Notes under the pieces: model-generated
What the model saw: the letters and a program-made list of their open reading frames with translations, nothing else
What the model was told of the DNA's origin: nothing
The model's database searches: none
NCBI RefSeq assembly: GCF_001194135.2
Contig: NC_068983.1
Coordinates: forward strand, 81,041,515 to 81,105,514
Reading direction: 5' to 3'
Source of the DNA: Octopus bimaculoides
Lineage: Eukaryota
Length of the DNA stretch: 64,000 nt
In this document: positions 1 through 57,139 of the stretch, piece by piece
How positions within the stretch are numbered: the stretch's first letter is position 1
Layout of the letters: every line of letters begins with the position of its first letter
Translations under genes and position numbers: made by a program

Positions 1-3000
1 GAATATGGATTATGATGAGTAATTGGAACAGCTGAAATTAGGTGTAAGTATAGCAGTCTAGATTGTGTTTGTAGATGAGAAAGAGGAAATTTGTAAAAGG
101 TATCTGGTGGGCAGTGGAAATATTAATTACTAGAAATAACCTGAAATAGTATCCACAACAGCTTTTTTAAAATTAGAGTATTAAGTGGGGTGTGTCCATA
201 TTGAAATTTTTGACTAAGATTAACTATGGTGGAAGGTGGAAAGCTTTAGCTGGAATTTGATGAAAATATGGAGTATAATTAAGAGAATTTTGTCAAATGA
301 AGGAAACAAACAATTTGACTAAGCTGGAATGCACAAGAATAATTGGAAAACTTTTTGATATCTTCATAGATTAATCAATGCTAAACTTTACATGGATACA
401 AAGTTCACCTTTTTAGCTGAAGCTGATGCTGAGAATATAACTGAGGAGATAAGATTGAGATTATTATTTGAGAGGAATAGTACATAAAAATGTTATTATT
501 TGAATTTAGTGGTGTTGAATGTCATATGAGTCAGTAAAGTTTTCAACTGATAATCTTAATATTGTCTGAATACTGCGAATAATGAAGGTTGAGTTCAATA
601 TTGTATACATCAGAATCATAAATGTTTTTCCGAGGAAATTAGTGTTTGATTTGGTAAATATTTATAACATTACAAGGAACATGTCTGAACAAGATAGAAT
701 GGCAGCTATTACACTTGGGAAATGTTTTGCATTTTCTGTCTGCAGCTGCAGCATTATGTTTCCATCTTATTACACAGAAAAGGATGGTGGGATTTAGACA
801 TGCTAATTAGATACCTTCTAAATATCATTAGTATGATAATTCTTCATACAATTAAGCTACAAGTAAAATAAAGTTTTCTTTATGAAACAACATAATATTT
901 TCATTTAAAAATAAATCATCAATCATTTACATAGATTTTAAGATTTTTATTATTTTCAAATGAAAAAACTATGCTGTTTCCTAAATGTTGTGTTACTTAA
1001 CTAACTGGATGATGAATTATCATACATATATTATTTAGAGTATATCTAATTACTGTTTCTAGATCCCTTTCTTTCTCTGTGTGTAACGAAAAAGTAAACA
1101 TGAATGCAGCAGCACATAAAATGTCTTTGAATTATTGTAAAAATCTTGTAACATGCACCATCATGAAGTTAGTGTTATACTAGTAAATCCATTATTAAAA
1201 TTTAATGATTTCATTAAAATTTTAAAGAAATGATATATTTTAAAGAAAATAACATTTTCTGAAAATATATTTATCAAACGATATGTCAAGTTGAAAACTA
1301 TAATCATGTAAAATCTATTTTCTTTTACTTTTATATAATATTTAAGCATTCAAAATGAAATCATAGTAAACTGTAAATGGCTGCAAGAAATTAGAAAATC
1401 CTAGAAATGCTCTTGCAATTTGACTGATAATAAAAGTTGATATACTTATTCTTAGGGTTTCTAATAAAGAAAAAGTAACATAATCTGCTTTATGCTTACT
1501 GCATTTAAAATTCAAATATTGTTTGAAAAGCAGATGATCTTATTAAATCTAATTATATTTAGAATATTAAATAATACATGGGCATTTTCAAAGTATAAAG
1601 TAAATATTACCTTGAGACACTTACTTCATTAGTAAACTTCAAATGAGGTAATTATCTGATTAAAGAAACTTTGATTGTATTCTAAATTAGCTATTTATGG
1701 GCCAGTTCACATTACTGGTTTTAAAAATGCTATGTTTTTAGAGAGTTGTCTAACCGTTATTGAGGATTTGCTCATAATATATATTTAAAAAATCACAGGA
1801 ATAATACAAAAACTCTTATAGTGAAACTTTAACAGTTTGTCATGGTTTCTAGTTAACTTTACAGCTAGGAAAGTCACATTTCAATGAAGCACAACCCTAG
1901 GTTGATGCTGAGCAATTTGAAATATCAGTTTTGATTAAGAAACTATCCCAACAGAAAAAGAAGGAGGAAGAGGAAGAAGAAGGAGGAAGAAGTTTATTAT
2001 TAAAGTTTTGGCGAAAGTATATCTATCCTAATGTGATCACCTGTTTAAAGAATCTATTTCACACACTATGCTAAACTATCCTAACTGTGAGGCCTCACAA
2101 CTTGGCAAGTGACACCAAAGTGATTAGTTCTGCTTGCCATGATGTGATGGATGACTTGCAGATGGGGATCAAATGTAAGAAGTTTTCTTGGGTTTTTTTC
2201 TTTTTCTTTTCAATTCATTATTGTTTTTCATGTTTTATTTGAATTTTTATCTACTTTATCAATGATATAACACAATTCTGCACACATACTTAGATATATA
2301 AGATATATGCACAAAATGATATAAAAAATAATAAGTAAGCAGAGATAGCAAAGTTTAACAAATATTATTTTATGGGCCAATACCCATAGTTAATTTGATT
2401 AAAACTTTTCCTCTTAATCCTTAGGAATCAAACTAAAAGATACTAACTGGTAGGGGATATTTTATATACCAGAGCATTACAGGTAGATTTCTTTCTCCCG
2501 CCAAACGAAAAACAAAAAGAAAAATAATTAAAAAATGTTTTGATAAGGTTGAAAGTGCCCAGAAGTTAATATTAAAATATATGAAATGAAACTTTGATAG
2601 AAGGAACTTAACAGTTCAATACTTGTAATTAATATCACTTTGAAAACACTGGTTCTTGTCTAATCACTAAAGTTAAGCAATATCAAACCAGGTTAGTGGT
2701 TGGAAAATCTAGGAATTCTAAGCATCATTATTAGTTTAAAGGCCTTGGTAGTGTAGTAAGCAGCCTGTCAGTCTTATACTCAATATAAGACAAAGAGGAC
2801 CGAAATCTCTTACTATGCAGTAATCAATAATACTATTATAACCTTAATAATTTAGTCATGATCAGTGACAGTAACCAGATTATATGAGAGTTGCATTATA
2901 TGCCTAAGACTGATATTTTATGTAAAAAGGGTTTTTTCTGCTTCAGAATAAGTATGAAAATTCTCACTTAGAACCACTTATTTTACAAATGCCCATGGGA

Positions 3001-3845
3001 AAGATACATTTCAGTATCCAATTTCTGTGCCTCTGAAAATCTGAGTTTCTTTCGTCTTTTTATATGGTAATATGTAAGATTCCTAGTTTTCTTCATTGTC
3101 AATAATTCCCATTATTTGAATTGTTCTCATCAGACGTTCTACATACAATAGTTAACTTTCTTCCTAATGAACATGCAATGAAAGTTATTCAGTTTATTAT
3201 AGCTACAAGAAATTTGAAAAATATTTACTTTTCTTTTTACTAAAATAATGTTTTCGTCACACAAAATGCAATTTGTAAGACTAAAAATATGAATGGTCTA
3301 CAAGGAAATGTCAAAGAGAAATTATGATTAACCAAATTTGACTGATTTGGAAGTGTTGCATGTTGATTTTGACTCCAGTAGTGAAGATTATAAAAACCCC
3401 AGAAAGTTGAGCAGTTATGATACTGTTTTCATTGTTAGAGGGTTTAGAAAATCCATCCAATCTACATCAGCAATGTGGGAACTAACCATAGAGAGTCATA
3501 CATTCATTCTCTAAATAAGACCATCTCATGAAAATTAACTTTTTCTGAATCAAATTGTATGCATGTACTTCATATAACATCTGCTATATGAAATACACAC
3601 AGTTTGTCATGGTTTTCTTTAGCTAACTTAACTTAAAAGTAACAAAATTATTTTATATAACAGATAAATCACAATAAATAAAATAAATTATTGTTTTTTG
3701 ATTTTTTTGCTAGTTAATTTTACTTTTTTTCTGGTTTTTACTTTCTATAAAAATTTTCTCTAAGCTTTATTCTCTATTTCACTCTTTTTTTTTTGTATCA
3801 GTAAACATCTAGAAAGATCCAAACTTAAGTACAATATTTTCTTAC

Positions 3846-4030
3846 CTGGTCGCACATCTTGCACTGGTAGGTTTTAGCAGCTTTGGTGGGCTTCACTGGC
3901 TGGGGTACCACCAAGGGTGCATTGGCAGCTGGAGTGGATGAGCCAACATGGGCAGTCCGATAGCCTCCGTTACTCTGAGTATTCGGACGTAAGTCTTGAA
4001 CTCGATTCATATTATCTTGATTGACACTAT
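3846..4030 (-). CDS. ZNF362: Coding exon of a ZNF362/ZNF384/lin-29/rotund-family C2H2 zinc-finger transcription factor; ends within the first finger
   Basis: Acceptor ttttatatgcttacag| and donor CAG|gtaaga; 185 nt, phase 1 to 0. Encodes (D)SVNQDNMNRVQDLRPNTQSNGGYRTAHVGSSTPAANAPLVVPQPVKPTKAAKTYQCKMCDQ. LVVPxP followed by KTYxCKxC matches the segment before finger 1 of ZNF362/ZNF384 as I recall it. The symbol denotes the family, not proven orthology. Confidence 0.88.
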
Positions 4031-5137
4031 CTGTAAGCATATAAAATGACATTGAAACTTAATAACAAGCTTTTCAAATCCTGTAAATAGCAGAGGCCTA
4101 CAGAGTTGCAGCAGAATATTACAAGCTGTTAACACAGATTAGACAAATTTGATGGCCCTCTTATGAGATATAAGAATTCATATGTTGTAGTGCTTACTGT
4201 AAAATTGCTGTCAATTACTAAACAATTTTGATGAAAAATCTAAAGCCACAATAGTTTTCTCTTGAAACATCCTAGACATAGAATACTAGTTACATAAAGT
4301 CGGTTTTCCAAAATCTCTAGAAAATTGCTGGTCATCACCAAAAAATTGAACAGATTTTAAGATAATATATTTTTTTGTATCCATCATTAATAAACTTTAA
4401 TCAATTTTCACTAGAACAAATCATTAATGTCTGAAATAACACAAAATGTATTTTGTAGAAAGTAATAAGCAATATCCTTGAAAAGCAACTTTGTATCTAC
4501 TTTGTTTGTTTTTACTAAATTTCTAAACAAAAGTATGAAGTTGTATTTATCATCTAGCATACAGAATGTTATACTTAATAAACCACCACATAAGAAACTA
4601 GCTTAACAAGGGCAATAACAACAACAACACTAATAGCAAATATAAGTAAGGCAGGCTACAACTGATGGCAGAGACTAGAGTTGGTAGAGATTAATGAGCT
4701 GGCATTTTTTAACTGATGTGGGTGGGGAAACTGAATTCCAAAGGGAATGGTGTGAAAATACAGAAACCAAGAGACTATTTTAAAGAGGAGTTTGTAAGTA
4801 AAATGTTTTAAAATACTTAAAATGAATTCATTTCAACAGAAAAATTGACTTCAATATAACACTAAAAATAGAGAGAAAAATCTAATTTTAAAAGTATGGT
4901 CTCAATCTTTCAAATGTTTGTGAGACAAAAGACAAACATTTAATACAAACACACACACACATATTTGTGTAAGGAGCCCATCTCACTGTCAACACCATAA
5001 TTTCTTTCTCTGTGCAGTCTAATATCCCTGAAGGTCAAAAGTGACATGAATGAGACACTGACATTGGTGAATCACTGGTTGAAGTACTTTTGAAACTAGC
5101 ATGGTGTGAAGAATGGGTAAATGATGCTGAGACATAT

Positions 5138-5362
5138 TTAACTGTTTAGCATTTAAACTGGCTACATCTGGCCTAAATATTCTACCTGTTTTGTGTTCAA
5201 ACCAGCTAGATCTGGCCTCTCACACCAATCCTACAATAGCATTCGAAAAATACACAATTACATTATTAAAATCTGAAAGCTATGAGATCATGCATGATTA
5301 ATTCAAAACAATGTGAATAAATAAGCAATGAATTTGTGAGAGTAATCTGAATGATAAAGGCT
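5138..5362. mobile_element. piggyBac-type MITE, second copy
   Basis: Begins TTAACTGTTTAGCATTT; colinear with the reverse complement of 29511-29726 (shared CCTACCTGTTTT...GCCTCTCACA...ATTAATTCAAAACAAT). Confidence 0.65.
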
Positions 5363-7268
5363 TCATATCTTTCAAGAGTAGTAGCTAAAAGATATGGTGT
5401 TCAATATCATTTGGAGGTTTATGGTGCTGTGCTGAAACTAATGAATAATGGCTAGTTTTAATTCTAATATTGATCAAATGACAAACATTCCAGTCTTTGT
5501 GATTCCAAGTTTTTTCCTACTAAATAATCACCTAGTCAGTTGTATGCTTTAGCTTTGAGAGTAAGTACACCCAATTTGTTTCATATCTATCTTTCTTTTG
5601 CAGATGTGAACCTTCAAAGTGTTTAAAATACATTACATCAAAGACAGAAATTGATTTAAAATGGTATCTGTGAAGATATAATTTAGATAATAAATAAGAG
5701 ATGCTGTACGTATATTTGATCATATTTTTCATCAATACTTCAGGAAAAGTAAACGCTATCCTTTGTGAATGAGGTGAGAATTAGACAAACCTTATGTTCA
5801 GAGCTCTCTCTCACACTTGTCCCCCCCCCCCACCAAAGCCAATAATATTAATCATTGACAAATACTTTTTTTCTTCATTGCGCAATTATTTGAAAGCTTT
5901 CAAGTTAATTTCTAGTATGATTTTTAAATGTTTTGTCCACTAAATAGGTTAATACTAAGTTGGGCATATTACATATAGTTATATAAGGATAGGTTATTGA
6001 AATTTTTTAAACACTGCTTAATGTGAAATACATCCTATCTAATGGCATGCAAATTATAGTTTGGTTCATTCCATTCAGTAAAATTCTCAGCATCCAACAG
6101 AAGAGACTGAACAATGAAACATCTCTATGAAAAGAGTCAATATTTTGGCAGAGGAAGGCTAAACAGAAAAAATATATACATAAACATTTGGTAAATTAAA
6201 ATGGCATCTGAGAGGTAACATGCTCAAAATGTATGTTTTAATAATAACTACATACAGAATAATCCTACACATCAACAAGCACATGTGAATGGGGGTGGAA
6301 GAGAAATTTAGAATAGAAACTACCGAAATTTAATGTAGTTGATTTGGTAGGATGTTTCAACTTTAATGACAAACAATATTTGAATCTCTATGCCAAAATG
6401 TTCAGTTAAAAAATGTAATATCCTCAATGTAGGTAAAGAGAATACTAAATAATATGTAATTAATATGTGATAGCAAAAAAATATCCTTCTGTATAGAATA
6501 AATGTAAAAGTTAGGAGAAGATATATTTCTCCAATAACATTTTATTATGTCATTTAGAAGAAATATTTTGAGTGAGCAGTGAGACTATTGGGACAATTAA
6601 AATGATGTACAAACACACACACCTTCCAAGAGCATCTCTATACAATCTTAATGTTATAATATACTGATTTATGCCAGTTAATTTTAAGTTTGTGAATCTG
6701 ATAAAAATAAAGTTCACTGAATTGATAAAGACTTCTAAAGAAACAATGATAACAATATATTAATATACCTAAAAATGGTTTCTTTGCTACTTTTGGTCAA
6801 ATACAATAACAACCTACATATATATATATATATATATATAATTAACAATATATGTATGTTTGTGTGTGCTTTGATACATTATTCTTTATAATTTAGTGTA
6901 AATACTTCCTGTCTTTTTTCGTTGTCCCTCCCATCATAATTTTACCTTCCCTTTTTGTATTTTCTCCCCCACCTCCCCTCATCTTCAACTCTCTCAACTT
7001 ATTTCAAATTCTCTATTTTTTTTTTATCTCTCAGTCTTTCTGGCATTTCCCTCCCTTCCCTTGAACTATTTTGTGGGAGCTTTCAGTCATCCTCTATGGT
7101 GTCAATAGCAACTCACCACCCAGGGGATTCCAAGTAAACTAAGAGTCATTTCCAAATTTAATTACATCTAATGGCCTACAGCTGTTTTGTTGGAGGTGAG
7201 CAGCATGTGTTTGTGTGTGCATGTGTGTGAGCAGCATGTGTTTGTGTGTGAATGTGTGTGTGTGTGTG

Positions 7269-7308
<40 letters not shown>

Positions 7309-10307
7309 AGAGAGAGAGTGAGAGATTCTTGCAGGGTTGGCAATCTTATGGTTGGTGGTCATAATGGAAGAAAATATAGTGAGTTGTGGTAGTCTAAGGT
7401 TAAGACATTGTGTTTATTGCAGTTTACATTAATGGCATGTTAACAGCTGGCCTGCTGATGCTTAAATGCCAGAAGAAGATGACTAGAGTGGAAGGATCTT
7501 GCTGACACAACAGCCAGACATGAGTTTAAAGACTAACCCCCACCTCCTACTCTGGACTCAACATTCCAATTTATAAAAATAGTCATTGAGGTCTTTTGTT
7601 TCCACCCATAAATAGAAATATCTGAAAATCTTTATTTGTTTCCCCCTTTTCTTTCTCTCTCCCTCTCCTCCTCACTCACTTTATGAGAATGTTCTATTGA
7701 AGTTCAATCTTCTGCCACAATTCTTTATCCTTAAACAGAAACTTGTTGATAAAAAAATGGTTGATATCATACTTGTAACACTGCTACCATTCTGAGTGTT
7801 TATTAATTTTTTTCTTTGAAAAATTGAAATGATACAAATCAAGCAAAAAGACAAAATATATTTATAACAATAATTTCTGATATTGATACAAACCACAGAT
7901 TTTCAAGAGGGATGTAATTGTTTTACTACATACTAGTATCTATTTTACATACTGGTATCTATTTTATCAAATGCAGTGTGATGATAGCAAAATCAACTCT
8001 GACAATGTTTGAACTTAGAACATGCAATTTGTCACTCCATCACCCTGATTTCTAACATTGTCTCAAAGCCACACACTTGAAGGAGAGGAGCAATGGTTTG
8101 CAAAGGTTCATAAATTGAGAGACACAATGTGTGATAATCAGAAGATGGACAAGTGAGTGAGGCATGTCAAAGTGAAGATGGCATGAGACTAGTTAATTTC
8201 AAAGGGTAAAGGCTACTGTAGTAGTGGTTGTAAAGAGAAAGAAAGAACTTTCAGAGTTTGAGGTGTATGCTATTCATATTTTGGGTGGGTTGGGCACAAT
8301 ATTGCTTACTTAATGTCCGATGTGATATTGTCTACCATCTGTTTAACAAGACAATATTGACATGACTTAACTGGAGAGTGTTTTTTGAGCCTATGTTCAG
8401 AGATACCTTGTAGGGTTTGGTATGAGGTACATCAGTTTTATGTCAGTGACAATTGGGTGTGGAAGATTAGGGAATATAATATGCCTCAAGTATTTGTCTG
8501 GTACTAACATCAATTATTACAGCATCTACTATAAACCAAGAAGACTAGCAGAAGTTGTAAAGTATTGAATTAAATGTTTTACAACACTTAGTTTTGACCC
8601 TCTAAGCTTTGATTCTGAATATCACCAGGATTAATTTTTGATGTTCATGCCTGTGTAGTCGATAAAATAAATAACAGAAATAAATGCATTATGGCCTGGT
8701 CATTGATTTTACCACTTCCCTACAAGCATAAAGTTTTGTGTCAAAGTGAAAAATCACTTCTTTTGGTTGAATTTATTTGAGTACATCACTGACATTAATT
8801 TGTCAATCCCTGGGTTGGTGATAATCATTATTGATATTGGCTAAATTTAAAAGCACAACAATGAAGCAGTGAACTAGAGATACAACATCTAATCTAGCAC
8901 TCTACTATGATTATTATTAGTATTATTATCATTATTACTATTATGATGATGATGATTTCTTAAATAAACATTAAAACATAAGGGCATTTATGACAAATGG
9001 TTCCTACTGGGAATTAAAAATTGGCTTTAATATCATATGCACAAAGTCCTCACCATGCCCCAGATGAAATTTTAAAAGATAAATCAAGAAAGCAGATATG
9101 GATTACTGATATAGCTTGTACTAATGAGAAAAACATTTATGAAAAGCATTTGCCAGCTGATATATTGTTTTACATAACAGAAATTGTGCATTGTTAACTA
9201 TTCTTTTTAGTTTTTGGCTATCTTCAACCATTTAGTAGTATGCAGTTATGAAAGCTGAATAACTTGTGTTTTTTTTTTACATGCAAACGTTTCCGTGTGA
9301 TTTTAGAAGTGAAGAGAGCAATAATGGAAATCATGTAACTAAAACGGTAGGGGCAAAATTGATTTTGAAACATGGCAGAATTATCGAAAATCTGTCCACA
9401 GACAAAAAACAAACATCACTATTGAAAATGAATAGCAACAAAAAAAAACAAAAAGAAATTAAGAATTAAATAAAGACTATGATGGTAAAATATGTTTGAA
9501 AGATTATTTTATAACTAATTCCTCTGTGACCAGTAAATGTAAGAAAAAGAAAGTTCAAGTGATTTTTTAGAAAGAAAAATAAATATTTTACATTATTATA
9601 AATAAGTATAATAGGATAGCATTCTTCAAATAATCTATTACTGAAGAGTACTTACTTTACTAAACAATTTGAATTTAGGAGATATCATAGTTAACAGCAA
9701 AAGTTTGTTTACACCAACCATATGTGTATCAAACAAGTATTCCACTCAACATACCTATAGCATATCTATATTTATATGCAAACTCTCCACCCAACAATAT
9801 TCAAGTGGACATTTTATGACAAAAATAGAGATGTACCAGGAAAATGTAGGATAAGTGCTTTGTATGGGAAGAACATATTTGGGGCATACATTTAGAGTAA
9901 AGGGGTAAATTGGAACTGTATTTAAAAGGTGTGTGGGGTATTTTGAAATAGAAACAAGTTTACCAAAGAGTGAATATAGTTCTTTATACTTGTGTTTACA
10001 CAGATGTGTAATAATTAGAGAGATTGATGTAACACAAGAAGATACATGATAATGATAACATCATGTAATGAGTTACATGATAAAAGTCATGTGGTAAAAA
10101 GCATAGAATAGAAAAGTGAGTGAAAAAAAAAAATAACAAACAATAACGGAGCAGCATAAAGAAATGATTAATCTCTGATTTGCAATAATCTCTGATTTGC
10201 ATACAAGAATGACGAAACATAAGCTGTTGTTATAGTCTTTAAAGAAAAGACTAGTGAGAGATGGTGGTAAATCTTTTCAAGCACAAAGTGAGAATAAATA
10301 TGCTCAC

Positions 10308-10334
10308 CTGTGACATGATTATCTTTAGACATAC
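10308..10334 (-). CDS. Candidate 27-nt cassette microexon / recursive-splice exon of the zinc-finger gene
   Basis: ttccatttctgttccatcaacag|GTATGTCTAAAGATAATCATGTCACAG|gtgagc; open in phase 1-1, adding GMSKDNHVT between the two flanking phase-1 exons. Confidence 0.55.
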
Positions 10335-11394
10335 CTGTTGATGGAACAGAAATGGAACTTTAGATAAAATTGAGTAGTATCAATCAGTAGACTAGGTTCG
10401 CACGAAATATGTACTAATAGCATGCATGAATACTGACAGAAAATTTCCCTTGAAACAAGATATATTGTAATTCACATAGACACACACACTCACACACACA
10501 TGCATAAACATTTCATTCATACTGTGGTATAATTTAACCAATTCTAGTGGTCAGAATATTGCAGGCAGCACTCTTAACACAGATTTACTCCACATGTTCT
10601 ACAAATATGCATATATACTATACGCACAATTTTTTTGCATATAACTATAATAACATAGTTATTTATTCAACAACAATTTAAACATAATTGCCAACATAAA
10701 TTATTGGGTGATTATTAAATACTATAATATGTAAAAGACAACAACAGCTATCTTCACATATCATATAGCACACAGTACTCTAAATTTAAACATGCAACAC
10801 AGACCGCACAAAAGTAACAAGACACTAGTGTTTCTCTGTTCAAAATAAAGTATTTCTCTATACAATAGTATCAATAATATAGAAAAGTTTTGATATGTCA
10901 AACATTATCTGCTTGACTAGTATTCCATCCACGATCATCCCAGCTTCTTTTGTGTCATATTATATCCAAGACTCATCCAGTTTATTCATCCATTTTTAAG
11001 ACAAGGAGAAATTTCAAGGAGATTTTGTTGCTATTTCTTGGAAATCAAGTGGCCATGTAGAGGCTCTCATTTTAGGAACTAACTGCGTGCCATGGGTCTG
11101 GACAACACAACAACAATATGTTGTCAATAATATATAAGCCTCTGTTATTCTTATATGGATTATCAGAGACAAAATCATAGATTACTGACAAGCAACTAAC
11201 CAGCCTATATATATATATATATNNNNNNNNNNAAAAATAACATATTAGAGAACCAATCTGAGTAAGACAATACATATAAAATAACATTTAAAAAGTATCA
11301 AAGTTAGTTTAGCATATCATAACCCTCAGAAGTAGAGTGTATTTTTGACTTCCAGGATAGTTCAGCAAATAGTTTTTTTAGTTGATTATTGCTA

Positions 11395-11407
11395 TATATT
11401 ATATACA

Positions 11408-11501
<94 letters not shown>

Positions 11502-11552
11502 CACACACACATATATGCATGTGTGTGTGTGTGCATATATACGTGTGTGTGT

Positions 11553-11596
<44 letters not shown>

Positions 11597-11610
11597 ACAT
11601 GCATGTATGT
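11395..11610. repeat. Compound (GT)/(AT)/(AG)/(AC) microsatellite; representative of dozens in the window
   Basis: Directly visible; similar compound arrays near 7.2, 12.3, 25.0, 30.5, 50.7, 51.7, 52.7 and 54.5 kb. Confidence 0.98.
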
Positions 11611-11814
11611 AAAATTCTTGTCATTCAGTATATAGAGTAGAATATATAACCAAAGTTTAGAAACCCATGAGTTCCTTTATAGTTTGAACAGTGTGTGCAT
11701 GTAGAGAATTCAAATTATTTTTTGAAATATCCTGTTGAAGTTATCCAGCAATACCCAGAACACAGAATGTATTTCAAACAAAAAAAAAAAAAAAAAAAAA
11801 AAAAAGAAGAGAAG

Positions 11815-12268
11815 AGATAGGTTTATATGTTTACTCAATATATTCTTACATGTATTTCATTACAGAATAGTTTTATAGTATTCAAAGATTTACCTTACAA
11901 TCAGATTGCATAAATCATTGAGATTATATATGAAATGAGAAATTTGCCTTAGGTGGTTCAACCCACACATCGTCTTTCCAACAGAATTTAAACAGGTTGG
12001 TAGTTTATAAGGTAGGAAGTTTATTATAACAATGGAGATGATGGTAAGTATATTAAGTCACAATGTGGCCTGCAACATTTAATATAGATTTATGATGCGA
12101 TGGTAGAGTCAATGACTAGGATAGACATATTAATCTATTTGAAAGTTACTATAACTTTAATTTTATCTGACCAACACTAGGTAGTTAACATACATTCTCA
12201 CAAATTCTGTTACATACAGAATGACTTTCACACACATACATATAAATAAATGTAAGTACTCATTTACA

Positions 12269-12325
<57 letters not shown>

Positions 12326-12440
12326 ATGTATGCATATGTATACATACACACATTTCTACATTCATTTATATACATATATACACAAAAATATGCATATAAT
12401 TAATCTCCCCTGCTTGCTAGTACCCTTAATTATTAATTTT

Positions 12441-12474
<34 letters not shown>

Positions 12475-12978
12475 AATTTGAACTATGAAGGCCTGTACAT
12501 ATATCTGTGCATGTGTGTGTATGTATCTATTTAGGTGTATATGTCAAACCATTTATATGTGTGTGTAAATGATATTATATATGTATGTGTAAATATTAGT
12601 TGCCTAGTGTTGGTCAGATAAAAGTGAGAATTAAACGAAGCTTTCAAGCAGATTAATATGTCTATCCTAATCATTAGTGCTCGCCATCTGGTAACAAAAA
12701 CCTATGTTCATTCTTCTAGACCACATGACAATTTAGCACACCATCATCTCTATTATAAGAAACTTTCTCTTTATAAACTGCTAACCCATTTAAATAAATT
12801 CTTTGAGACCTTAATCATGGCAGAAGGTAGGTTTAACTATTACAAATTTTCTTATATTCTATACAACCTCTGATGATTTGATGATGCAATCTGATTGTAT
12901 GGTAAAACCTTTAATAAAGAATTTATTCATTGAAGAAACACATGTAAGAATGTATTGAATAAATGTACAAACTTATCT
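11815..12978. repeat. Long imperfect inverted repeat (foldback); arms about 430 bp, microsatellite spacer
   Basis: Colinear reverse-complement matches along both arms, e.g. 12161-12181 vs 12603-12624, 12116-12145 vs 12641-12670, 11896-11911 vs 12885-12899, 11817-11852 vs 12941-12976. Confidence 0.9.
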
Positions 12979-15900
12979 ACATTCTTATGATATATACAAA
13001 CATATGTATAGATACATGTATATATATATATATATGTACATACATACATATGTTTGTTGTTGACCAACTATTAGATATACAGAAGCAGAAAGTACACTTT
13101 AAAGATATTAATATGTAAAGGCAACTGTCATTTTGCATAAAGTGAGACTTCCCATTCTCTGAATAAGCTTAAAGAAACAGGTTCAGAAAATTATTATCTG
13201 TTAGAAGTTCTGGCAAAAGAAAACAGAAATGGCATGAATAAGTTATAGTTAATAATGCATGCCTAAATTTGAATAACTTGAAAAAGTACTTCACTCGCAA
13301 AAATGACATAAAAAGCCAAACACTCTATTTTCAAGTGTATTTTTTGCATAACCAAGTGGTTTGAATTGTGTGATGAAACAAAGGAGAATTTATCTTATAA
13401 GCAGGAATGTTAATAATGATTTTAAAGTGTTAGAACATCTCTTTAACAGAAAAATTGTTATAGTAAAGAATAAATGCTATCTTGGCTTTTTTTTCTCTTT
13501 ATCATCCATTCTTTTTTCTATTAAGATAATGTAGAAATGGAAAAGATATTCAGATAAAAATAAACTAAGATATGAAGCGACAATAGATTTATTAGTTTCA
13601 ATGCCAACAATGGTAAGAAACTGAAGTTTGAAAAAAAAAAAATCAAAGTGCTTATAAGATAAATAAAATGTATCATAAATGTTCCATAGATGGCCATGTT
13701 GATTTAGTGTATGGTTGAAATAGGTTAAATATCAGTGTTTATGTGTCTTAAGGCTAAAACAGTTCTTACAAGACAACATTTAGATTTAGAGAATTCTTAA
13801 TTATTGTTAACAATGATACAAAATTAATTAGAAGATCTGATTTCAAAGACTTACATTTTGTTCCGCTCATGAAATATGATTGGTCTACAAGAACAGAATA
13901 AGAAACCTCAGACCTAATGTCAAATAACATGCCAAATTATATTTGTTAGAAAAATCAAATCAATTAAACTGAGATGTATTAATGATATATATTAATAGTG
14001 AATTTAAAGTCTATTATTTCTCAAGAAGATAAGAAATATCTTCATTATAGTTATATAATTTTTTTTGAGATTTTTATGTAATACTGAAGAAATGAAAGGA
14101 AATTAAAGAATAATGTAGAAATATTTAAAGGGAAATAAGGTTACATCATAAAAAAGAAGAAAAATACTTTTAAAAGTCAATCTGATCATTGTAAACACAG
14201 AAGTTAGAATTTCTTCTTTTTATTGACTCTTTTACATTTTTTTTGTAAAAAGAAATGTAAGGTTAATATTTTATCCATAATTAAGATATGACATAGTGGA
14301 CTTTGGACAAAGGACAAAGCATAGATAATATATGGAATTAACAAGGAAGAGGGAACAGCACAATATGCCCTTTGAAGGGCCCTCCCAGAATAGTGTAATT
14401 CAGAATTTAAAAAATGTAAACAAAGAGACTGTTTGTTTATATGATTTGAACTTGCATCTTTAAATTTAAATTCTTCAAGGTCTGGCTTTAATTTTCACAA
14501 TTATATCTCTTTTGTTATTTAGCTAGAGAATGAACAGCACAAAAGACCTTTGCAAGCTTGCAGATTACTGATGTTGATGCAGTTGACATTGTTTTCAGGA
14601 CTAATAAGTATCATTGATTATATTTTTTCAATACATTTACAAAAACAAAGAAAAAAAAAGAATGTTTTGTATTTTCCCCCCATAATACAAGTAGTTCATT
14701 GGATCCCTAAGCACAATAATGTTTCACCAAGGAATGAAGAAATATGATGAACAAGTATTCTTGAATAACTTCCACTATGAAATATAAACATATCTAAAGT
14801 TGTATCTATTAATAAATCATTAAACATTTATTTATTTTTAAAAATCCTCAAAGCTTGGAATGAGGATTTGGTTTGCTCAAAGGAACTAGCACTTCCCGTA
14901 CAATAACCCTTTTCTAACTGGCTTGATTGTTAGGAAATCTTTTGCCAATAGAAACGCCTTCCTGTAGTGTATACTGGGTGTATTTTGGTACAATTTGGTG
15001 AGAAGACTGAATATACTAACCCTGATTTTGGCAATTAATCTAAGCGATGAACACTTCAAATGTAATACCTGGAACCATCATGAGAGCTAACCTTCATTTT
15101 GAATAATCAGCATCGGTAGGATGGATGACAAAAAATATCTTTGTATTTGACTACATTACCAAAGTAGATAGATATAATTTTGTCTGATGTTGACTAGATG
15201 GGCCATAACCTGTACATAATGAATAGGTACACAGCAAATTGTGATGCAGATTAGACAGATACTGTTTGCCTGTGCAAAAAAAAAATGCTAAGGGGGTATA
15301 AACACGGTCATCATATTTGCAACTAAAACATAGCCCCTGCCATCAGAAGTGAAAATAAAGAAAAATGAAGATTGTGCAAAATGGAAATTAGCGAAATAAT
15401 TTGTAAATCACAAAAAAAAAAAAAAAAAAACTTAGTAAAAAAAGATTGTACTTAATGTGAATATTTATCAATTGTGTTTTTAAAAATTTCTTGGAGTTAT
15501 GTTCAAAAATAAAATTCATTGAAATATTTTATTAAAGAACAACATTTTATAAGTTTTACACACAGCAGATAATGAACCTTCTAAGATAAATGAAACATGC
15601 ACATGCAAATAAATAAATAACTTGATAAATGAATAAATAAAATGATTTCAAGTAAAAATGCTAGTAGTTCATTCATCTAAATTCTGTATATTTTATTTCT
15701 GTGAACATTTTTCAAGAACAAGAAACTAAATGTAATGCCATCTATCATTGCAAAATTATTACAAGGCTTTTTATTTGGTGAGCTCGATTGAGAAATAAAT
15801 TGGAATATGTAAGCCATGCAGAGATTTCCAAAGACTAAATATGTAAGCTACATTGATGTTCTCAAACTATATGAGGTTAAATAGCATGTAACCCATTCTG

Positions 15901-16966
15901 CTGTGAAAAAAGAAAAAAATCGAAATTTGAAAAATTTCATTTCTATGTAGATGATTATAAACAAAAGACAAATGTCCTTTCTTTAACTTGGTATTGCAAC
16001 AACAAATTTACCATAGAAAATAATAGTTGCTCATAAGTAACGGCAGTTGGTCTATTATTGACATTTTTCATTGATAAAAACAAAATTGTTGCCTTGTGAA
16101 AAAGAACAAAATAAAAAATAATATAACTGATGTCAGATGAACAGCATTTATCAGATAAATACTATTTTTTTATCAGATAAACAAAATTTGCAAATTTATT
16201 CTTACAATTTATTTTTATTGCTGTTGTGGAATAGTCAGATGCATAGACCTTGCAGCATAACGTTCTGAGATCAAGTATTTCTTATTGGATATCAACAAAG
16301 TCAACATAGGCATGTCCCAGTGTGTCACCACTTGTACCAGTATATTACAGATTCTTAGCCTAAATATTTGAACTCAAACCTGTTATATTGAAACCTTTTA
16401 TAATCAAGTATCATTACATCTGAGCCAATCTAATATTTGGCAATGATCAACTTTAGATGATAACCTGCCAATCTTTTACACATTGTTATCAGCTTAAATG
16501 AATATAACATTCATAACATTGATTACAAAATGTTATAAACAAATTTATTAGATGATGATTTTGTCAGGACAAGAAACTAAGTTTTTAAAATTAATTTTTA
16601 TTTTAATTCTATTACATTTTTATATTATAAATGCAACTTACATATTACTATGTTAGCAGTTTCTTGTTATGAATGTTGTGAAAGGCTTGATAGCTTAAAA
16701 TAAGAGACAAGAATGATGATTAATTGCTAATGGACAATGGTCAACACCATTATGTTGTTCTCACTGAACTTCTACATAAAGTAGCATGTAATAAAATATG
16801 TAAAGCCAATGATGGTAAAAGAAACTGGCATAACTCTATAAAAATAAATACTTCTCTTTTACTGAGAGGGTTGAGCGGATTGAGGTGATCAGAGAAAAGA
16901 GAAAAATGGAAACTGAAAGTGTAAATGGGAAAAATGACACAATAATATTTCAGCGTAGTCACTTAC

Positions 16967-17050
16967 CTTCATATGCACCTAAGTGATCATCTATTTGACC
17001 AGCACATGCTTTCCTCCACAGAGGCTTGTAGGAATGATATGTCTGTATGT
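16967..17050 (-). CDS. Upstream coding exon of the same zinc-finger gene (84 nt, phase 1-1)
   Basis: Acceptor cattttctcccattag| and consensus donor GAAG|gtaagt. Only one frame is open: (D)IQTYHSYKPLWRKACAGQIDDHLGAYE. It joins in frame to 3846-4030. The W...GQID motif resembles the ZNF384 N-terminus (PYFWP...GQIEN, recalled). A second acceptor lies 8 nt inside, at 17042. Confidence 0.8.
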
Positions 17051-18397: not shown

Positions 18398-19044
18398 CTT
18401 AAATTTGATTGAATTTTCAGATTTTGAAATTTACAGTAACAAAAATTGAACTTTCAAATTATAATTTTTTTAAAAAGGTATTCCATGTTTTTTGTAACCT
18501 TTGCCAGTTGTGGAAACAAACGCTGATAGCTCTCATATATTCTACTACGTACAGCACTGAATGCATATCTCAGCAGTAGTTGGTAGAAATACCTTATTGA
18601 CTTCAACCATAGTTATTATTATCTAGGTGATGGTTGATGAGAAAAGAACACTAAAATTGACACAAACTAGCAATAATGTGGCTTCCAGTTGCCGGGTTCT
18701 GCAATTTCTAACATTTTTCATGAACTGTGTGCAAATGTATTTTTTTATATTTATATAATTTTCCTCAAAACTAACCTTTTAAACATTCCCTTTGCATCTC
18801 CCCCTCCCCATCCCAACATACACTATTATCAAAATCAAAAGGACACCTGAGGATAATATGGATCTTGATATATAAAGATATGTTATGGATATGGATGGAG
18901 CATCTTTCATCATGCCTGCTTGATCAGAGCTGACATAAGGCTAAATAACTTCAAGCATTTACAGTTCATTTCAGTTTCAGAATTATGTTTACACATATAC
19001 GCAAAACAGTTAAGAAACTATGTTTAGTATGTCAGTAGATACTT

Positions 19045-19432
19045 GAAAGTGGAGGCGCAATGGCCCAGTGGTTAGGGCAGCGGACTTGCAGTCATAGGAT
19101 CATGGTTTTGATTCCCAGACTGGGCGTTGTGAGTGTTTATTGAGCGAAAACACCTAAAATTCCACGAGGCTTTGGCAGGGGATGGTGGCAAACCCTGCTG
19201 TACTCTTTCACCACAACTTTCTCTCACTCTTACTTCCTGTTTCTGTTGTGCCTGTAATTCAAAGGGTCAGCCTTGTCACACTGTGTCACGCTGAATATCC
19301 CCGAGAACTACGTTAAGGGTACACGTGTCTGTGGAGTGCTCAGCCACTTGCACGTTAATTTCACGAGCAGGCTGTTCCGTTGATCAGATCAACTGGAACC
19401 CTCGACGTCGTAAGCGACGGAGTGCCAACAAC
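19045..19432 (+). mobile_element. Full-length tRNA-derived octopus SINE (OR2-like)
   Basis: tRNA-like head with box A TGGCCCAGTGG (19061) and box B-like GGTTTTGATTCCC (19104); about 390 bp; CAA-repeat tail; target-site duplication AGATACTT at 19037-19044 and 19433-19440. Family name is from recall. Confidence 0.9.
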
Positions 19433-19708
19433 AGATACTTATTAGTACCTTTGTACTAATAAGAGATATTGCCAAAATAAAACATCAGGTGAAATATTTA
19501 ATTTATTAAACCATTTATAAAACTATAGAATAAAAAAAAAATTATAAAATAAAACTATCCAGTTTAGAACTAGAATAGCTTTTACTGAAAATTAATAGCA
19601 AAAATACCTTTTAGTTGCTGACTTGCAGAAAGAGAATGGACAAAGAATAATGGCATAAAAAAAAGAGTACCATTACCCATATAATAGTTGGATCATGTAC
19701 GTTAGCTA

Positions 19709-19709
<1 letters not shown>

Positions 19710-19759
<50 letters not shown>

Positions 19760-53122: not shown

Positions 53123-54345
53123 CTCTTTCTCCCCCCCCCCTTCATAATAATAACAATAATAATGACAACAAGAATAATAAATATATAAATGGCAAGAATC
53201 ATGTTACAGCATGGCATGAATTTGAAGAATAATAAAAAAAAATGTAATCAGAAATAGTATGATGGACAGTAAAGCTTCTTTTTCTTATATCATCATCATC
53301 ATCTTTGACTTTTTACTAACCATAATTGGGTGCATATTTCATCATCCCTCCCCCTACATCTTATTACTCTTCCTTCATATTGATTTTTCAATATTTCAAT
53401 AAGCATCTTTCACCCATATAAATAGTAGGATTCAAACTGCTTCCTTTTATTTACTCAGCTGTTCCTCCCGTTCTGTTTTACAGAATTTGGGGATGAGCAG
53501 GGTGTAAGGATCTTTTTTGCCTTCTCTTCCTTATCCTATCCACTTGATCTCCATTTCCAGTAATAAATAAACATGAACAAAAAAACGTCCAAACAACAAA
53601 AATACAAAAAAAAAAAAACAAAATAAAAAAAACAACTTAGCATAGATACAGACATCTGTATTACAATTTCCGATGAATCATTTGAAAAGTAAAAAAGAAT
53701 TTTTATTATTATTATTANNNNNNNNNNNNNNNNNNNNNNNNNNNNNNNNNNNNNNNNNNNNNNNNNNNNNNNNNNNNNNNNNNNNNNNNNNNNNNNNNNN
53801 NNNNNNNNNNNNNNNNNNNNNNNNNNNNNNNNNNNNNNNNNNNNNNNNNNNNNNNNNNNNNNNNNNNNNNNNNNNNNNNNNNNNNNNNNNNNNNNNNNNN
53901 NNNNNNNNNNNNNNNNNNNNNNNNNNNNNNNNNNNNNNNNNNNNNNNNNNNNNNNNNNNNNNNNNNNNNNNNNNNNNNNNNNNNNNNNNNNNNNNNNNNN
54001 NNNNNNNNNNNNNNNNNNNNNNNNNNNNNNNNNNNNNNNNNNNNNNNNNNNNNNNNNNNNNNNNNNNNNNNNNNNNNNNNNNNNNNNNNNNNNNNNNNNN
54101 NNNNNNNNNNNNNNNNNNNNNNNNNNNNNNNNNNNNNNNNNNNNNNNNNNNNNNNNNNNNNNNNNNNNNNNNNNNNNNNNNNNNNNNNNNNNNNNNNNNN
54201 NNNNNNNNNNNNNNNNNNNNNNNNNNNNNNNNNNNNNNNNNNNNNNNNTATTATTGTTTCATTTCCTTTTGACATAATAAATGCAACATTGAAAGCTATG
54301 CAATAACAATATGACCAGTAATAGCAATAACACATAAACAATATA

Positions 54346-55995: not shown

Positions 55996-56454
55996 ATAAG
56001 AGACTACCATCATGTGTATATGTGTGAGTGTGTGTGCATGCGTGTATGTGTATAAACAAATATCTGTTGATTCATCAGAAATTATAAATTTCAGGACTTA
56101 AAACAAATGTAGAGTATTCTTTAATACATTATAACTGAAAGGCTCCAATTTCCAGCACTCAGAGTCACTCATTTCTGACTGTTAGCTGCTAAACTGGGCC
56201 TGCTTTTCACTGATAGAATATATTTTTTGAAATATGAAACAAAAGGTTGAAGAAAACTCTTATCCATATATATCACACCAACACCCTCGCATCACACCAC
56301 GCACACACTACAACTGACCAACTCCTTTCTCCCCTCCCCATTTTTACACTACATACGTCAAGATCACCAACATTCTGTCTCCCACACACACAGCCCCTCG
56401 TTCTTCAATCACCGTTCTTTCTCCCCCTTTTCTTAGCTCTCCTGAAAAAAAATT

Positions 56455-56700
56455 TCTAACTTCCGGTCAGCCATTACTATGATTAGCCATTACTATGATT
56501 GACCGTTGACTGGACACTATTCAATTTTTTTTTTCTCCGTGTTTTTCTCCTTGTCTCCGTATTCTTTCTGTTGAAGAGCGTAGCTCGAAACGTCAAAGAC
56601 TTTCCGTATTCCCGAGCGTCATACTAATACATCCTTTTGTTATTTACACCACCTGTCCTCGTCTGTTGTTGTTTTTTCGTACATTCTCCCATATATATAT
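56455..56700 (+). mobile_element. Penelope-like retroelement terminal (pseudo-LTR-type) fragment
   Basis: CpG-rich relative to flanks; contains a minimal hammerhead motif; ends in an AT tail; internal 16-bp tandem duplication AGCCATTACTATGATT. Confidence 0.6.
56563..56599 (+). ncRNA. Minimal type I hammerhead ribozyme motif with variant core CUGUUGA
   Basis: TCTTT-CTGTTGA-A-GAGC-gta-GCTC-GAAAC-GTC-AAAGA: perfect stems I and II, palindromic stem III, GUC triplet. Confidence 0.65.
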
Positions 56701-57139
56701 ATTTCCATGCACCTATAAATGTACACACACACATTTAACTATACATGCATGCATATCCATGCAGTGGTGCACCCATATACAAATGTTTGTCAGAGCCTGA
56801 CAAATCATATACATATGTGTGTGTATGTGTGAGTGAAATTATGATAAAAAGAAGTTTATATCATTTGTTCCCTATGTATGTCTCACTGTTTTGGTTGTTT
56901 TCAACTTGTGCATTAGATGACCTAAGCACAAGTGGATGCTGTACCATGACAGATCATCAGGGGAACACAGTGTTGCATCATGTTACAGTGATCAAATATC
57001 TGAAATGGAACAGATGGTGAGACATTTTATAAGTATGCCAAGAGGGAAGCATATAGATAGCAAACAGGAGAGAGAGAGAGAGAGGGGGAGAGAGAGAGGG
57101 AGAGAGAGAGAGAAGACAGGATATAATTTTTTCCTTTCC

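What the first reader, a model, noticed from the sequence alone, without database searches (positions are those of the whole stretch)
10300..10360. 27-nt microexon whose first bases form a 5' splice site: recursive-splicing (RS-exon) architecture
Seen on the minus strand: pyrimidine tract + CAG|GTATGT, with a second donor CAG|GTGAGC 27 nt later. Splicing the upstream exon (ending GAAG) onto it creates GAAG|GTATGT, a strong new donor. The 12.9 kb intron could therefore be removed in two near-equal steps (6.6 and 6.3 kb) leaving no trace, or the distal donor could be used to insert GMSKDNHVT in frame. Established: ratchet points and RS-exons of this form occur in long Drosophila and vertebrate neural genes. 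Inference: a coding RS-microexon in a cephalopod transcription factor; I know of no description of recursive splicing in molluscs. A UGCAUG (Rbfox-type) motif lies at 10421-10426, but that hexamer is common here.
Basis: partly seen in the sequence, partly recalled or inferred. Interest (0 to 1): 0.78.

Follow-up and report, generated by a model that had tools for sequence, protein, structure and literature searches.

The report
Candidate 27-base microexon, recursive splicing unproven
Midway through a 12.9-kb intron of a mollusc ZNF384/rotund-type transcription-factor gene lies a very exon-like, in-frame 27-base unit that also begins with a splice-donor word, so it could be re-spliced out as in fly Ubx; no RNA or cross-species evidence could be obtained, and the sequence itself predicts inclusion rather than traceless removal.

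Summary
The sequence is exactly as described, on the minus strand. A CUAAA branch-like word and a 20-nt tract (75% pyrimidine) precede CAG|GTATGT at 10334. A 27-nt open unit follows (10334..10308), then CAG|GTGAGC. The unit lies 6.6/6.3 kb into a 12,936-nt phase-1 intron and would insert GMSKDNHVT.

The bare AG|GT word with a pyrimidine tract is at chance level (4 per 124 kb, two antisense). The full acceptor-27 nt-donor unit is not. It is the best short exon-like pair in the window, and about 3 in 10,000 random introns contain an in-frame equivalent.

The host gene belongs to the ZNF384/rotund family. Patella vulgata isoforms vary at the same exon junction.

The regenerated donor AAG|GTATGT (8.8 bits) is clearly weaker than the distal donor (13.7 bits). 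Under the published donor-competition rule this predicts exon inclusion, not zero-length recursive splicing.

No related-species sequence reached the site.

Best reading: a real alternative cassette microexon with a putative RS-exon start (0.45). Rivals: unused pseudo-exon (0.27), Ubx-like re-splicing (0.12), cryptic ratchet point (0.08), alternative first exon (0.08).

The architecture is known from flies and vertebrates. Interest is modest until RNA data exist.

The parts
10359..10363 (-). Branch-point-like word CUAAA, 26-27 nt upstream of the acceptor. The AG at 10359-10358 is too close to it to compete (its acceptor score is -0.7 bits).
   Evidence: inference from the yUnAy consensus (established knowledge)
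10335..10357 (-). Candidate 3' splice site: a 20-nt tract ttccatttctgttccatcaa (15/20 pyrimidines) followed by CAG. It scores 9.4 bits. The two other exons of the window score 6.2 and 5.9. It is in the top 0.8% of all AGs in the window.
10308..10334 (-). 27-nt unit GTATGTCTAAAGATAATCATGTCACAG. In the phase-1 context it is open and encodes GMSKDNHVT. GC is 33%, which is intron-like (the other exons are 42% and 50%). It holds an in-frame ATG at 10332-10330. It is unique in the window and not part of a repeat.
10329..10334 (-). GTATGT at the start of the unit. Joined to an exon ending AAG it gives AAG|GTATGT (8.8 bits), the putative recursive 5' splice site.
10302..10307 (-). Distal donor CAG|GTGAGC, 13.7 bits. 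It is the best donor on the gene's strand and second best of the window.
16967..17050 (-). Proposed upstream exon (84 nt, phase 1 to phase 1, ends GAAG|gtaagt, donor 11.8 bits). It has an open frame and good splice words, but no detectable similarity to the Patella protein.
4031..16966 (-). The 12,936-nt phase-1 intron that holds the unit. The site splits it into 6,632 nt and 6,277 nt.
3846..4030 (-). Downstream exon, supported by homology. It encodes ...PLVVPQPVKPTKAAKTYQCKMCDQ, the start of the first C2H2 finger of a ZNF384/rotund-family protein. It is 100% identical in a close relative and 87% identical in a distant one.
10421..10426 (-). TGCATG, 87 nt upstream of the acceptor. A second copy lies at 10504..10499, on the edge of a (TG)n run. 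There is none within 1 kb downstream of the distal donor.

Best explanation
The unit 10334..10308 is most likely a genuine, alternatively included 27-nt coding cassette microexon of a mollusc ZNF384/rotund-family gene. It would be recognised through its own branch site, pyrimidine tract, CAG acceptor and very strong GTGAGC donor. When included, it adds GMSKDNHVT to the poorly conserved region just before the first zinc finger.

Because it begins with GTATGT, joining it to the upstream exon regenerates a moderate 5' splice site. Formally this makes it a 'putative RS-exon'. The regenerated donor is clearly weaker than the exon's own donor, so once the acceptor has been used the expected outcome is inclusion. 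The skipped isoform would then arise mainly by ordinary exon skipping (16966 to 4031 in one step), with re-splicing at most a minor route.

Shown: the letters, the frame, the rarity of the composite and the gene family. Inferred: that the acceptor is used at all, and which donor wins.
For: - Acceptor 9.4 bits and donor 13.7 bits, both better than those of the window's two other exons.
- It is the only acceptor-donor pair of 60 nt or less at that level on either strand.
- A branch-like CUAAA lies at -27, with a clean AG-free zone up to the acceptor.
- Its length is a multiple of 3 and it is open in the required phase. In-frame equivalents occur in 0.03% of random introns, at thresholds set by the real exons.
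- It is not repeat-derived.
- RefSeq isoforms of the Patella vulgata orthologue differ by a 4-residue segment at exactly the homologous junction, so small alternative events at this junction exist in the family.
- Published rule: relative donor strength governs inclusion versus zero-nt removal, and weakening the ratchet donor converts cryptic RS-exons into expressed ones (PMC8605326; PMC6224609).
- About 3% of vertebrate exons regenerate a 5'ss, so such a start on a real exon is unremarkable.
Against:
- No transcript-derived protein spanning the junction exists in the 5.8-billion-protein collection.
- There is no conservation evidence. Three protein searches, one metagenome scan and the fetched relatives' contigs never reached the site.
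- GC content of the unit is intron-like (33%).
- No UGC word lies within 68 nt of the acceptor, unlike SRRM4/eMIC-type microexons.
- 27-nt exons are hard to define without such enhancers (established knowledge).
- Thresholds near the candidate's own scores are post hoc.
- Over a whole genome, many such composites are expected by chance.
- Donor strength does not always predict the outcome. Fly hth is skipped despite a weaker ratchet donor.
Confidence: 0.45

Rival explanations
1. Unused pseudo-exon. The acceptor, the GTATGT and the strong donor are a chance constellation in AT-rich intron DNA and are never, or only noisily, used.
For: - The bare AG|GT ratchet word is at chance level: 4 per 124 kb, two of them antisense, including a textbook t11CAG|GTGAGT at 45256 on the + strand.
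- In-frame microexon-like pairs at relaxed thresholds occur in 4.5% of random introns.
- GC content is 33%, like the intron.
- No transcript-derived protein was found.
- The finding was picked post hoc from a scan.
Against: At thresholds set by the window's real exons, the composite occurs in only 0.03-0.4% of random introns, and it is unique in 124 kb. The donor is the best on the gene's strand.
Confidence: 0.27
2. Expressed RS-exon in the manner of Ubx mI/mII. The exon is always spliced to the upstream exon first. The choice between GTATGT and GTGAGC then decides skipping or inclusion, so the skipped mRNA arises by two-step re-splicing.
For: - The architecture matches: AG|GT start, second donor 27 nt on, frame-preserving, in a developmental transcription-factor gene with long introns.
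- The site is at the intron midpoint, as fly sites tend to be.
- Exonic elements and the splicing history can override donor strength.
Against: - The regenerated donor is weaker than the distal donor by about 5 bits. All seven expressed fly RS-exons tested had the stronger ratchet donor.
- In vertebrates the EJC usually represses such regenerated donors.
- No intermediates could be examined.
- The exon that supplies GAAG is unverified.
Confidence: 0.12
3. Cryptic zero-length ratchet point. The unit serves only to define the site, is always removed through GTATGT, and never appears in mRNA. The intron is taken out in two halves.
For: It has a juxtaposed 3'ss/5'ss and a downstream donor less than 100 nt away, as at most fly ratchet points. 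It sits at the midpoint of an intron over 10 kb.
Against: - Cryptic RS-exons generally have the stronger donor at the ratchet point and are out of frame or carry stop codons. Here the ratchet donor is the weaker one and the unit is open and in frame.
- At 12.9 kb the intron is at the short end for fly recursive introns.
- The donor is GTATGT, not GTAAGT.
Confidence: 0.08
4. End of an alternative first exon. Transcription starts within a few hundred bases upstream, translation starts at ATG 10332-10330 (MSKDNHVT...), and only the strong donor at 10307 is functional. The acceptor would then be coincidental.
For: - There is an in-frame ATG two bases into the unit.
- Two Patella isoforms (X12, and X13 named 'rotund') begin with short alternative first exons (MDNNLNG.., MDWNGIQCLVDKYLG..) spliced to the orthologue of exon 4030-3846.
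- From memory: Drosophila rotund makes Rn and Roe from alternative promoters.
- A TATA-like word and TCAGTA lie 30 nt apart at 10464/10434.
Against: - The chance of an acceptor this strong within 60 nt upstream of a given donor is about 2.6%.
- There is no CpG island here: o/e is 0.35 at 10335-10834, against 1.0-1.2 at the window's islands.
- TATA-like and TCAGT words are common in 70% A+T DNA.
- Upstream ATGs lie in the would-be leader.
Confidence: 0.08

Closest known systems
Drosophila Ubx microexons mI and mII (Hatton et al. 1998, as summarised in PMC8605326)
   Same: Short, frame-preserving coding exons inside a very long intron of a developmental transcription-factor gene. Each begins with a regenerable 5' splice site, so inclusion or skipping can be decided after the first splice.
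   Different: The Ubx microexons are 51 nt, ultraconserved at all positions, and experimentally shown to re-splice, and their ratchet donors are stronger than their own donors. Here the unit is 27 nt, conservation and RNA use are unknown, and the ratchet donor is the weaker one.
Drosophila intronic ratchet points with cryptic RS-exons (Burnette 2005; Duff 2015; Joseph 2018; Pai 2018)
   Same: AG|GT with a pyrimidine tract, a second donor less than 100 nt downstream, a long intron, a position near the midpoint, and a developmental gene.
   Different: Fly sites are ultraconserved, mostly lie in much longer introns, use GTAAGT-like donors stronger than the RS-exon donor, and have RS-exons of about 50 nt that are out of frame. 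None of these holds or could be tested here.
Vertebrate annotated RS-exons kept in mRNA by the exon junction complex (Blazquez et al. 2018, PMC6224609)
   Same: An otherwise normal exon whose first bases regenerate a 5'ss at the exon-exon junction. The strength of that site decides whether the exon is constitutive, alternative or skipped.
   Different: Those exons are mostly constitutive and of normal length. EJC repression was shown in human and mouse but not seen in Drosophila. Nothing is known for molluscs.
Neural microexons dependent on SRRM4/eMIC (3-27 nt)
   Same: A length of 27 nt, a multiple of three, a strong flanking donor, and an insertion into a disordered protein region.
   Different: The defining UGC word close upstream of the acceptor is absent, with the nearest at -68. 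Tissue specificity and flank conservation are unknown.
Patella vulgata ZNF384 isoform set (XP_050414393-407, XP_055958571)
   Same: The same gene family, and the same exon junction carries small alternative events and alternative first exons. The gene is very long, at 183 kb.
   Different: The Patella variant segment (IFSL) shows no sequence similarity to GMSKDNHVT. Its DNA could not be fetched, so whether it is a microexon or a shifted splice site is unknown.

Membership tests
Recursive splice site / ratchet point with RS-exon | [quoted passage not shown] | tested here: met
   ttccatttctgttccatcaaCAG|GTATGT at 10334. 3'ss 9.4 bits; regenerated donor 8.8 bits.
Recursive splice site / ratchet point with RS-exon | A further 5' splice site less than 100 nt downstream that defines the RS-exon | tested here: met
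   CAG|GTGAGC lies 27 nt downstream and scores 13.7 bits. Criterion taken from PMC6224609.
Recursive splice site / ratchet point with RS-exon | For zero-length (cryptic) use: ratchet-point donor stronger than the RS-exon donor | tested here: not met
   8.8 vs 13.7 bits with a generic matrix. U1 pairing is also interrupted at +4 in GTATGT. Rule from PMC8605326. Exceptions are known (hth).
Recursive splice site / ratchet point with RS-exon | Located in a long intron, typically over 10 kb, often near the midpoint | tested here: met
   The intron is 12,936 nt, split 6,632/6,277. Criterion from PMC6110457. This is the short end of the range.
Recursive splice site / ratchet point with RS-exon | Strong evolutionary conservation of the acceptor|donor word | not testable with these tools
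   No orthologous sequence reached the site.
Recursive splice site / ratchet point with RS-exon | RNA intermediates: upstream-exon^site junctions continuing into the intron, saw-tooth coverage, lariats from the regenerated donor | not testable with these tools
No reads were laid.
Expressed RS-exon (Ubx mI/mII type; vertebrate annotated RS-exons) | The exon is present in some mature mRNAs | not testable with these tools
   No transcript-derived protein spans the junction in the protein collection. There are no reads.
Expressed RS-exon (Ubx mI/mII type; vertebrate annotated RS-exons) | The exon-exon junction regenerates a 5'ss comparable to canonical ones | tested here: inconclusive
   AAG|GTATGT scores 8.8 bits, against 11.4-11.8 for the two other donors. 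No species-specific score distribution is available, and the upstream exon is unverified.
Expressed RS-exon (Ubx mI/mII type; vertebrate annotated RS-exons) | Destroying the regenerated donor converts skipping into constitutive inclusion | not testable with these tools
   Needs a minigene or genome edit (test described in PMC8605326).
Neural (SRRM4/eMIC-type) microexon | Length 3-27 nt, frame-preserving | tested here: met
   27 nt, open in phase 1.
Neural (SRRM4/eMIC-type) microexon | [quoted passage not shown] | tested here: not met
   The nearest TGC words are at -68, -88 and -92. The criterion is from my own knowledge of the vertebrate literature.
ZNF384 / rotund / LIN-29-type zinc-finger gene (host gene) | Sequence similarity of the encoded exon to named family members | tested here: met
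   Exon 4030-3846 matches Patella vulgata 'zinc finger protein 384' / 'rotund' isoforms (50% identity, E 5e-15) and oyster and other mollusc fragments.
ZNF384 / rotund / LIN-29-type zinc-finger gene (host gene) | The C2H2 finger array | not tested
   Only the first half of finger 1 (YQCKMCDQ) lies in the window. The rest is beyond position 1.

The most novel reading that the evidence does not exclude
The regenerated GTATGT donor really is used. The 12.9-kb intron of this mollusc ZNF384/rotund gene would then be removed in two steps through a coding RS-microexon, either always or in competition with inclusion of GMSKDNHVT as at fly Ubx. That would be the first recursive splicing documented in a lophotrochozoan. 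It would argue that the RS-exon mechanism predates the split of the three bilaterian super-clades.
Probability: 0.2. Interest if true: 0.55.

Novelty: new member of a known kind. Interest (0 to 1): 0.3.

Why it matters
Recursive splicing and RS-exons have been worked out in Drosophila and vertebrates only. I found no paper linking them to molluscs or cephalopods. Cephalopod genes have very long introns and large nervous systems, so a validated case would extend the mechanism to a third bilaterian super-clade. It would also give a handle on how such introns are processed.

For the gene itself, an alternative 9-residue insert just before the zinc fingers of a ZNF384/rotund factor would be a new isoform worth testing.

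As it stands, this is a well-formed sequence prediction whose most likely outcome (plain inclusion or skipping of a cassette microexon) is ordinary.

Tried and rejected
I did not feed read-laying run accessions seen in other outputs.

2. Transcript-derived proteins. A search with the joined exons plus the microexon found only genomic read-through fragments of the downstream exon from two relatives.

3. Orthologous DNA at the site.
- Contigs of a distant relative (L001-L010, about 3.9 kb upstream of the downstream exon) contain no AGGTATG, no donor of 10 bits or more, and no similar peptide.
- Contigs of a close relative (L011/L012) cover only window 2736-5156.
- Two searches with concatenated six-frame pieces from 8.6-11.3 kb, meant to catch any called ORF on a neighbouring contig, found nothing.
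- A degenerate-pattern scan of the metagenome contigs found nothing.
- The Patella locus is too long (183 kb) for its DNA to be served.

4. Repeat origin: rejected. Only the (TG)n run at 10471-10522 recurs.

5. Rbfox regulation: not supported. TGCATG occurs 84 times in the window and is tied to microsatellites. Both copies lie upstream of the exon and none lies downstream.

6. SRRM4-type microexon: the UGC word is absent.

7. Distal-end recursive site (the exon's own CAG|GT used as an acceptor, PMC10156609): its acceptor score is only 4.2 bits.

8. Homology support for the upstream exon: none (BLASTP, tblastn and a shuffle test).

9. Alternative-promoter signature near the unit: no CpG island.

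10. The Sibley et al. 2015 paper was not held under the PMC id I tried. Its claims are cited via PMC5126111 and PMC6224609.
Full report
OBSERVATION

On the minus strand the window reads ...aucuaaag ttccatttctgttccatcaaCAG|GTATGTCTAAAGATAATCATGTCACAG|GTGAGCat. The first base after the acceptor is 10334, the unit is 10334..10308 (27 nt), and the distal donor G is 10307.

- The exon proposed upstream (17050..16967) ends GAAG|gtaagt.
- The exon downstream (4030..3846) follows ...gcttacag and ends ...TGCGACCAG|gtaaga.
- Translating the joins shows a phase-1 intron of 12,936 nt.
- With the unit included, the protein reads ...HLGAYE-GMSKDNHVT-DSVNQDNMNRV... without a stop codon.

Every coordinate and letter in the finding is therefore correct.

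IS IT MORE THAN CHANCE?

I scored splice sites with generic metazoan position matrices against the window's base composition.

| Site | Score (bits) | Comparison |
|---|---|---|
| Candidate acceptor | 9.4 | the two other exons score 6.2 and 5.9 |
| Regenerated donor AAG\|GTATGT | 8.8 | |
| Distal donor CAG\|GTGAGC | 13.7 | the other exons score 11.8 and 11.4 |

- The acceptor is in the top 0.8% of 6,836 AGs.
- The distal donor is the best on the gene's strand and second best of the whole window.
- The bare ratchet word (acceptor at least 9.4 bits plus regenerated donor at least 8.8 bits) occurs four times in 124 kb. Two are on the antisense strand, including a textbook t11CAG|GTGAGT at 45256. 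The AG|GT word alone therefore means nothing here.
- The full unit is different. It is the only acceptor-donor pair of 60 nt or less at real-exon level on either strand.
- In 3,000 first-order Markov copies of the intron, an in-frame, open AG|GT unit at thresholds set by the real exons (3'ss at least 6, regenerated donor at least 8, distal donor at least 10) appeared in 0.03% of copies. In any frame it appeared in 0.4%. At the candidate's own scores it never appeared.
- At relaxed thresholds, and without the AG|GT requirement, in-frame microexon-like pairs appear in 4.5% of random introns.
- The unit is not part of a repeat.
- A branch-like CUAAA sits 26-27 nt upstream. The only intervening AG is too close to it to compete, with an acceptor score of -0.7 bits.

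Within this window the composite is thus clearly unusual. Over a whole genome of this size, many such composites would still arise by chance, and the finding was selected post hoc.

THE HOST GENE

An exhaustive HMMER search with the two joined exons found eight proteins at E-values up to 0.001. Three of them (P0002, P0007, P0009) were long proteins matched in many short stretches, and I took them for low-complexity hits. Of the other five, one was a 462-residue protein and four were short genomic read-through fragments.

- Cluster look-up names the long protein 'zinc finger protein 384 isoform X4 [Patella vulgata]'. A sister isoform is named 'zinc finger protein rotund', and one fragment is from the oyster Magallana gigas.
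- The match covers exon 4030-3846 only (50% identity, E 5e-15). It ends at KTYQCKMCDQ, the first half of zinc finger 1. The finger array itself lies beyond the window's start.
- The upstream exon 17050-16967 shows no similarity to Patella by BLASTP or tblastn. In a shuffle test, 4,450 of 5,000 shuffles scored as well. Its status, and hence the GAAG that completes the regenerated donor, rests on an open frame and good splice words only.
- 'Cephalopod' could not be verified. The named relatives are molluscs.
- The Patella gene spans 183 kb for a 469-residue protein, so very long introns are a family trait.
- Thirteen Patella isoforms differ, among other things, by IFSL+G versus S exactly at the junction homologous to the one studied.
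- Two Patella isoforms start with short alternative first exons spliced to the orthologue of exon 4030-3846.

RELATED SEQUENCES

- The downstream exon is present in Logan contigs of two relatives.
- In the close relative (L011/L012) the exon is 100% identical in DNA, and the whole 2.5-kb stretch, flanking intron included, aligns at about 83% with gaps.
- In the distant relative (L001-L010) the exon is 87% identical. The introns do not align except for three islands: window 7396-7512, 7136-7187 and 2104-2165.
- Neither set reaches the microexon.
- The distant contigs stop at a microsatellite about 3.9 kb upstream of the exon. That stretch holds no AGGTATG, no donor of 10 bits or more, and no GMSKDNHVT-like frame.
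- I spent the two remaining protein searches on concatenated six-frame pieces from 8.6-11.3 kb, hoping to catch a called ORF on a neighbouring contig. Both were empty. A degenerate-pattern scan of the metagenome contigs was empty too.

RNA EVIDENCE

I did not try to get around that. The first protein search would have picked up any transcript-derived protein spanning the junction, with or without the insert, or the recursive intermediate read into the intron. It found none. This is weak negative evidence, because the collection evidently holds almost no transcripts of this gene.

MECHANISM

The published framework is clear.

- At a ratchet point, an RS-exon is first defined with the help of a downstream donor and spliced to the preceding exon. 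The regenerated donor and the RS-exon's own donor then compete (PMC6224609; PMC8605326; PMC5126111).
- Cryptic, never-included RS-exons generally have the stronger donor at the ratchet point. They are poorly conserved inside and are out of frame or carry stop codons.
- Weakening the ratchet donor in vivo converts them into expressed exons.
- Here the ratchet donor is about 5 bits weaker than the distal donor, and its U1 pairing is interrupted at +4. The unit is also in frame and open.
- By these rules the unit should be included once its acceptor is used.
- Donor strength is not the whole story. Fly hth is skipped despite a weaker ratchet donor, and Ubx-m1 and msi are included despite stronger ones. 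Exonic elements and the history of upstream splicing both matter.
- In vertebrates the exon junction complex normally represses regenerated donors, keeping RS-exons in the mRNA. This was not seen in Drosophila. Nothing is known for molluscs.
- Features that fit recursive splicing are the position at the intron midpoint and the intron length above 10 kb, though 12.9 kb is at the short end.

VERDICT ON EXPLANATIONS

| Explanation | Confidence |
|---|---|
| Genuine alternative 27-nt cassette microexon that happens to qualify as a 'putative RS-exon'; skipping mainly in one step | 0.45 |
| Chance pseudo-exon that is not used | 0.27 |
| Ubx-like expressed RS-exon, whose skipping goes through re-splicing | 0.12 |
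| Cryptic zero-length ratchet point | 0.08 |
| 3' end of an alternative first exon, starting translation at ATG 10332 | 0.08 |

The alternative first-exon reading is suggested by the Patella first exons and, from memory, by the Rn/Roe promoters of Drosophila rotund. Two things argue against it. A top-0.8% acceptor exactly upstream would be an improbable coincidence (about 2.6%). There is also no CpG island at the site (o/e 0.35, against 1.0-1.2 at the window's islands).

The Rbfox hint is not supported. TGCATG occurs 84 times in the window, twice the shuffle expectation, because it rides on TG/TA microsatellites. Both nearby copies are upstream of the exon and none is downstream. The SRRM4-type UGC word is absent. 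The exon's own CAG|GT makes a poor acceptor (4.2 bits), so a distal-end recursive site is unlikely.

COMPARISON AND NOVELTY

The closest known things are:
- the Ubx mI/mII microexons, which are coding RS-microexons in a developmental transcription factor;
- the fly intronic ratchet points with cryptic RS-exons;
- the vertebrate annotated RS-exons.

About 3% of vertebrate exons regenerate a 5'ss (1,105 expressed in HeLa cells; more than 6,400 potential). An exon that starts with GT-A-x-G-T is therefore not remarkable in itself.

In the searchable library, 'recursive splicing' co-occurs with cephalopod only in a reference list. It co-occurs with mollus* only in two papers on unrelated topics (one occurrence of each term; not opened). 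It never co-occurs with octopus.

If validated, this would be a new member of a known kind, in a new phylum. Unvalidated, it is a tidy prediction. Interest: 0.3.

Noticed in passing
window 7396-7512, 7136-7187 and 2104-2165 (minus strand); L001 1784-1899, 1991-2041, 4874-4935: Three intronic islands are 76-90% identical to a distant relative whose introns otherwise do not align at all. They have no open frame and carry CAGCTG/CATCTG E-box-like and TAATTA homeodomain-like words. They are probably conserved enhancers of this ZNF384/rotund-family gene.
   Followed up: partly
window 45243-45263, + strand (antisense to the gene): A textbook ratchet-point word, gtttttttttttCAG|GTGAGTAA (3'ss 12.1 bits; its donor, at 14.1 bits, is the best in the window). 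It lies on the strand opposite the gene, with no second donor within 60 nt. It is either chance or belongs to an unrecognised + strand transcript.
   Followed up: partly
window 34104, minus strand: A second AG|GTATGT site (cttctctgtgtatAG|GTATGTAT) has the same acceptor and regenerated-donor scores as the finding but no nearby downstream donor. It lies next to TA/TG-rich sequence.
   Followed up: no
It has no detectable similarity to the Patella ZNF384 N-terminus (the shuffle test is not significant), so its exon status is unverified.
   Followed up: yes
Patella vulgata ZNF384 isoforms P0008, P0010-P0021 (alignment A2, columns 80-90): The isoforms differ by IFSL+G versus S at the junction homologous to the one studied. 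Two isoforms use short alternative first exons joined to the orthologue of exon 4030-3846. The gene spans 183 kb.
   Followed up: partly
window 56251-56750, 19001-19750, 27251-27750: These are local CpG islands (o/e 0.7-1.2) in a window that is otherwise strongly CpG-depleted (o/e 0.21). They are candidate unmethylated promoters. The one at 19.0-19.75 kb lies about 2 kb upstream of the proposed exon 17050-16967. Region 57-58 kb also has 45% GC and a GC skew of +0.46.
   Followed up: no
whole window: TGCATG occurs 84 times, against 44 expected from dinucleotide shuffles. This is largely because it forms at the edges of TG/TA microsatellites. Motif-based Rbfox calls in this genome need that background.
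   Followed up: yes
window 41277-41724, 49362-50134, 53718-54248 and six shorter runs: Assembly gaps (1,969 N in all) flanked by TA/TG/GA microsatellites. Any exon or element inside them is invisible.
   Followed up: no
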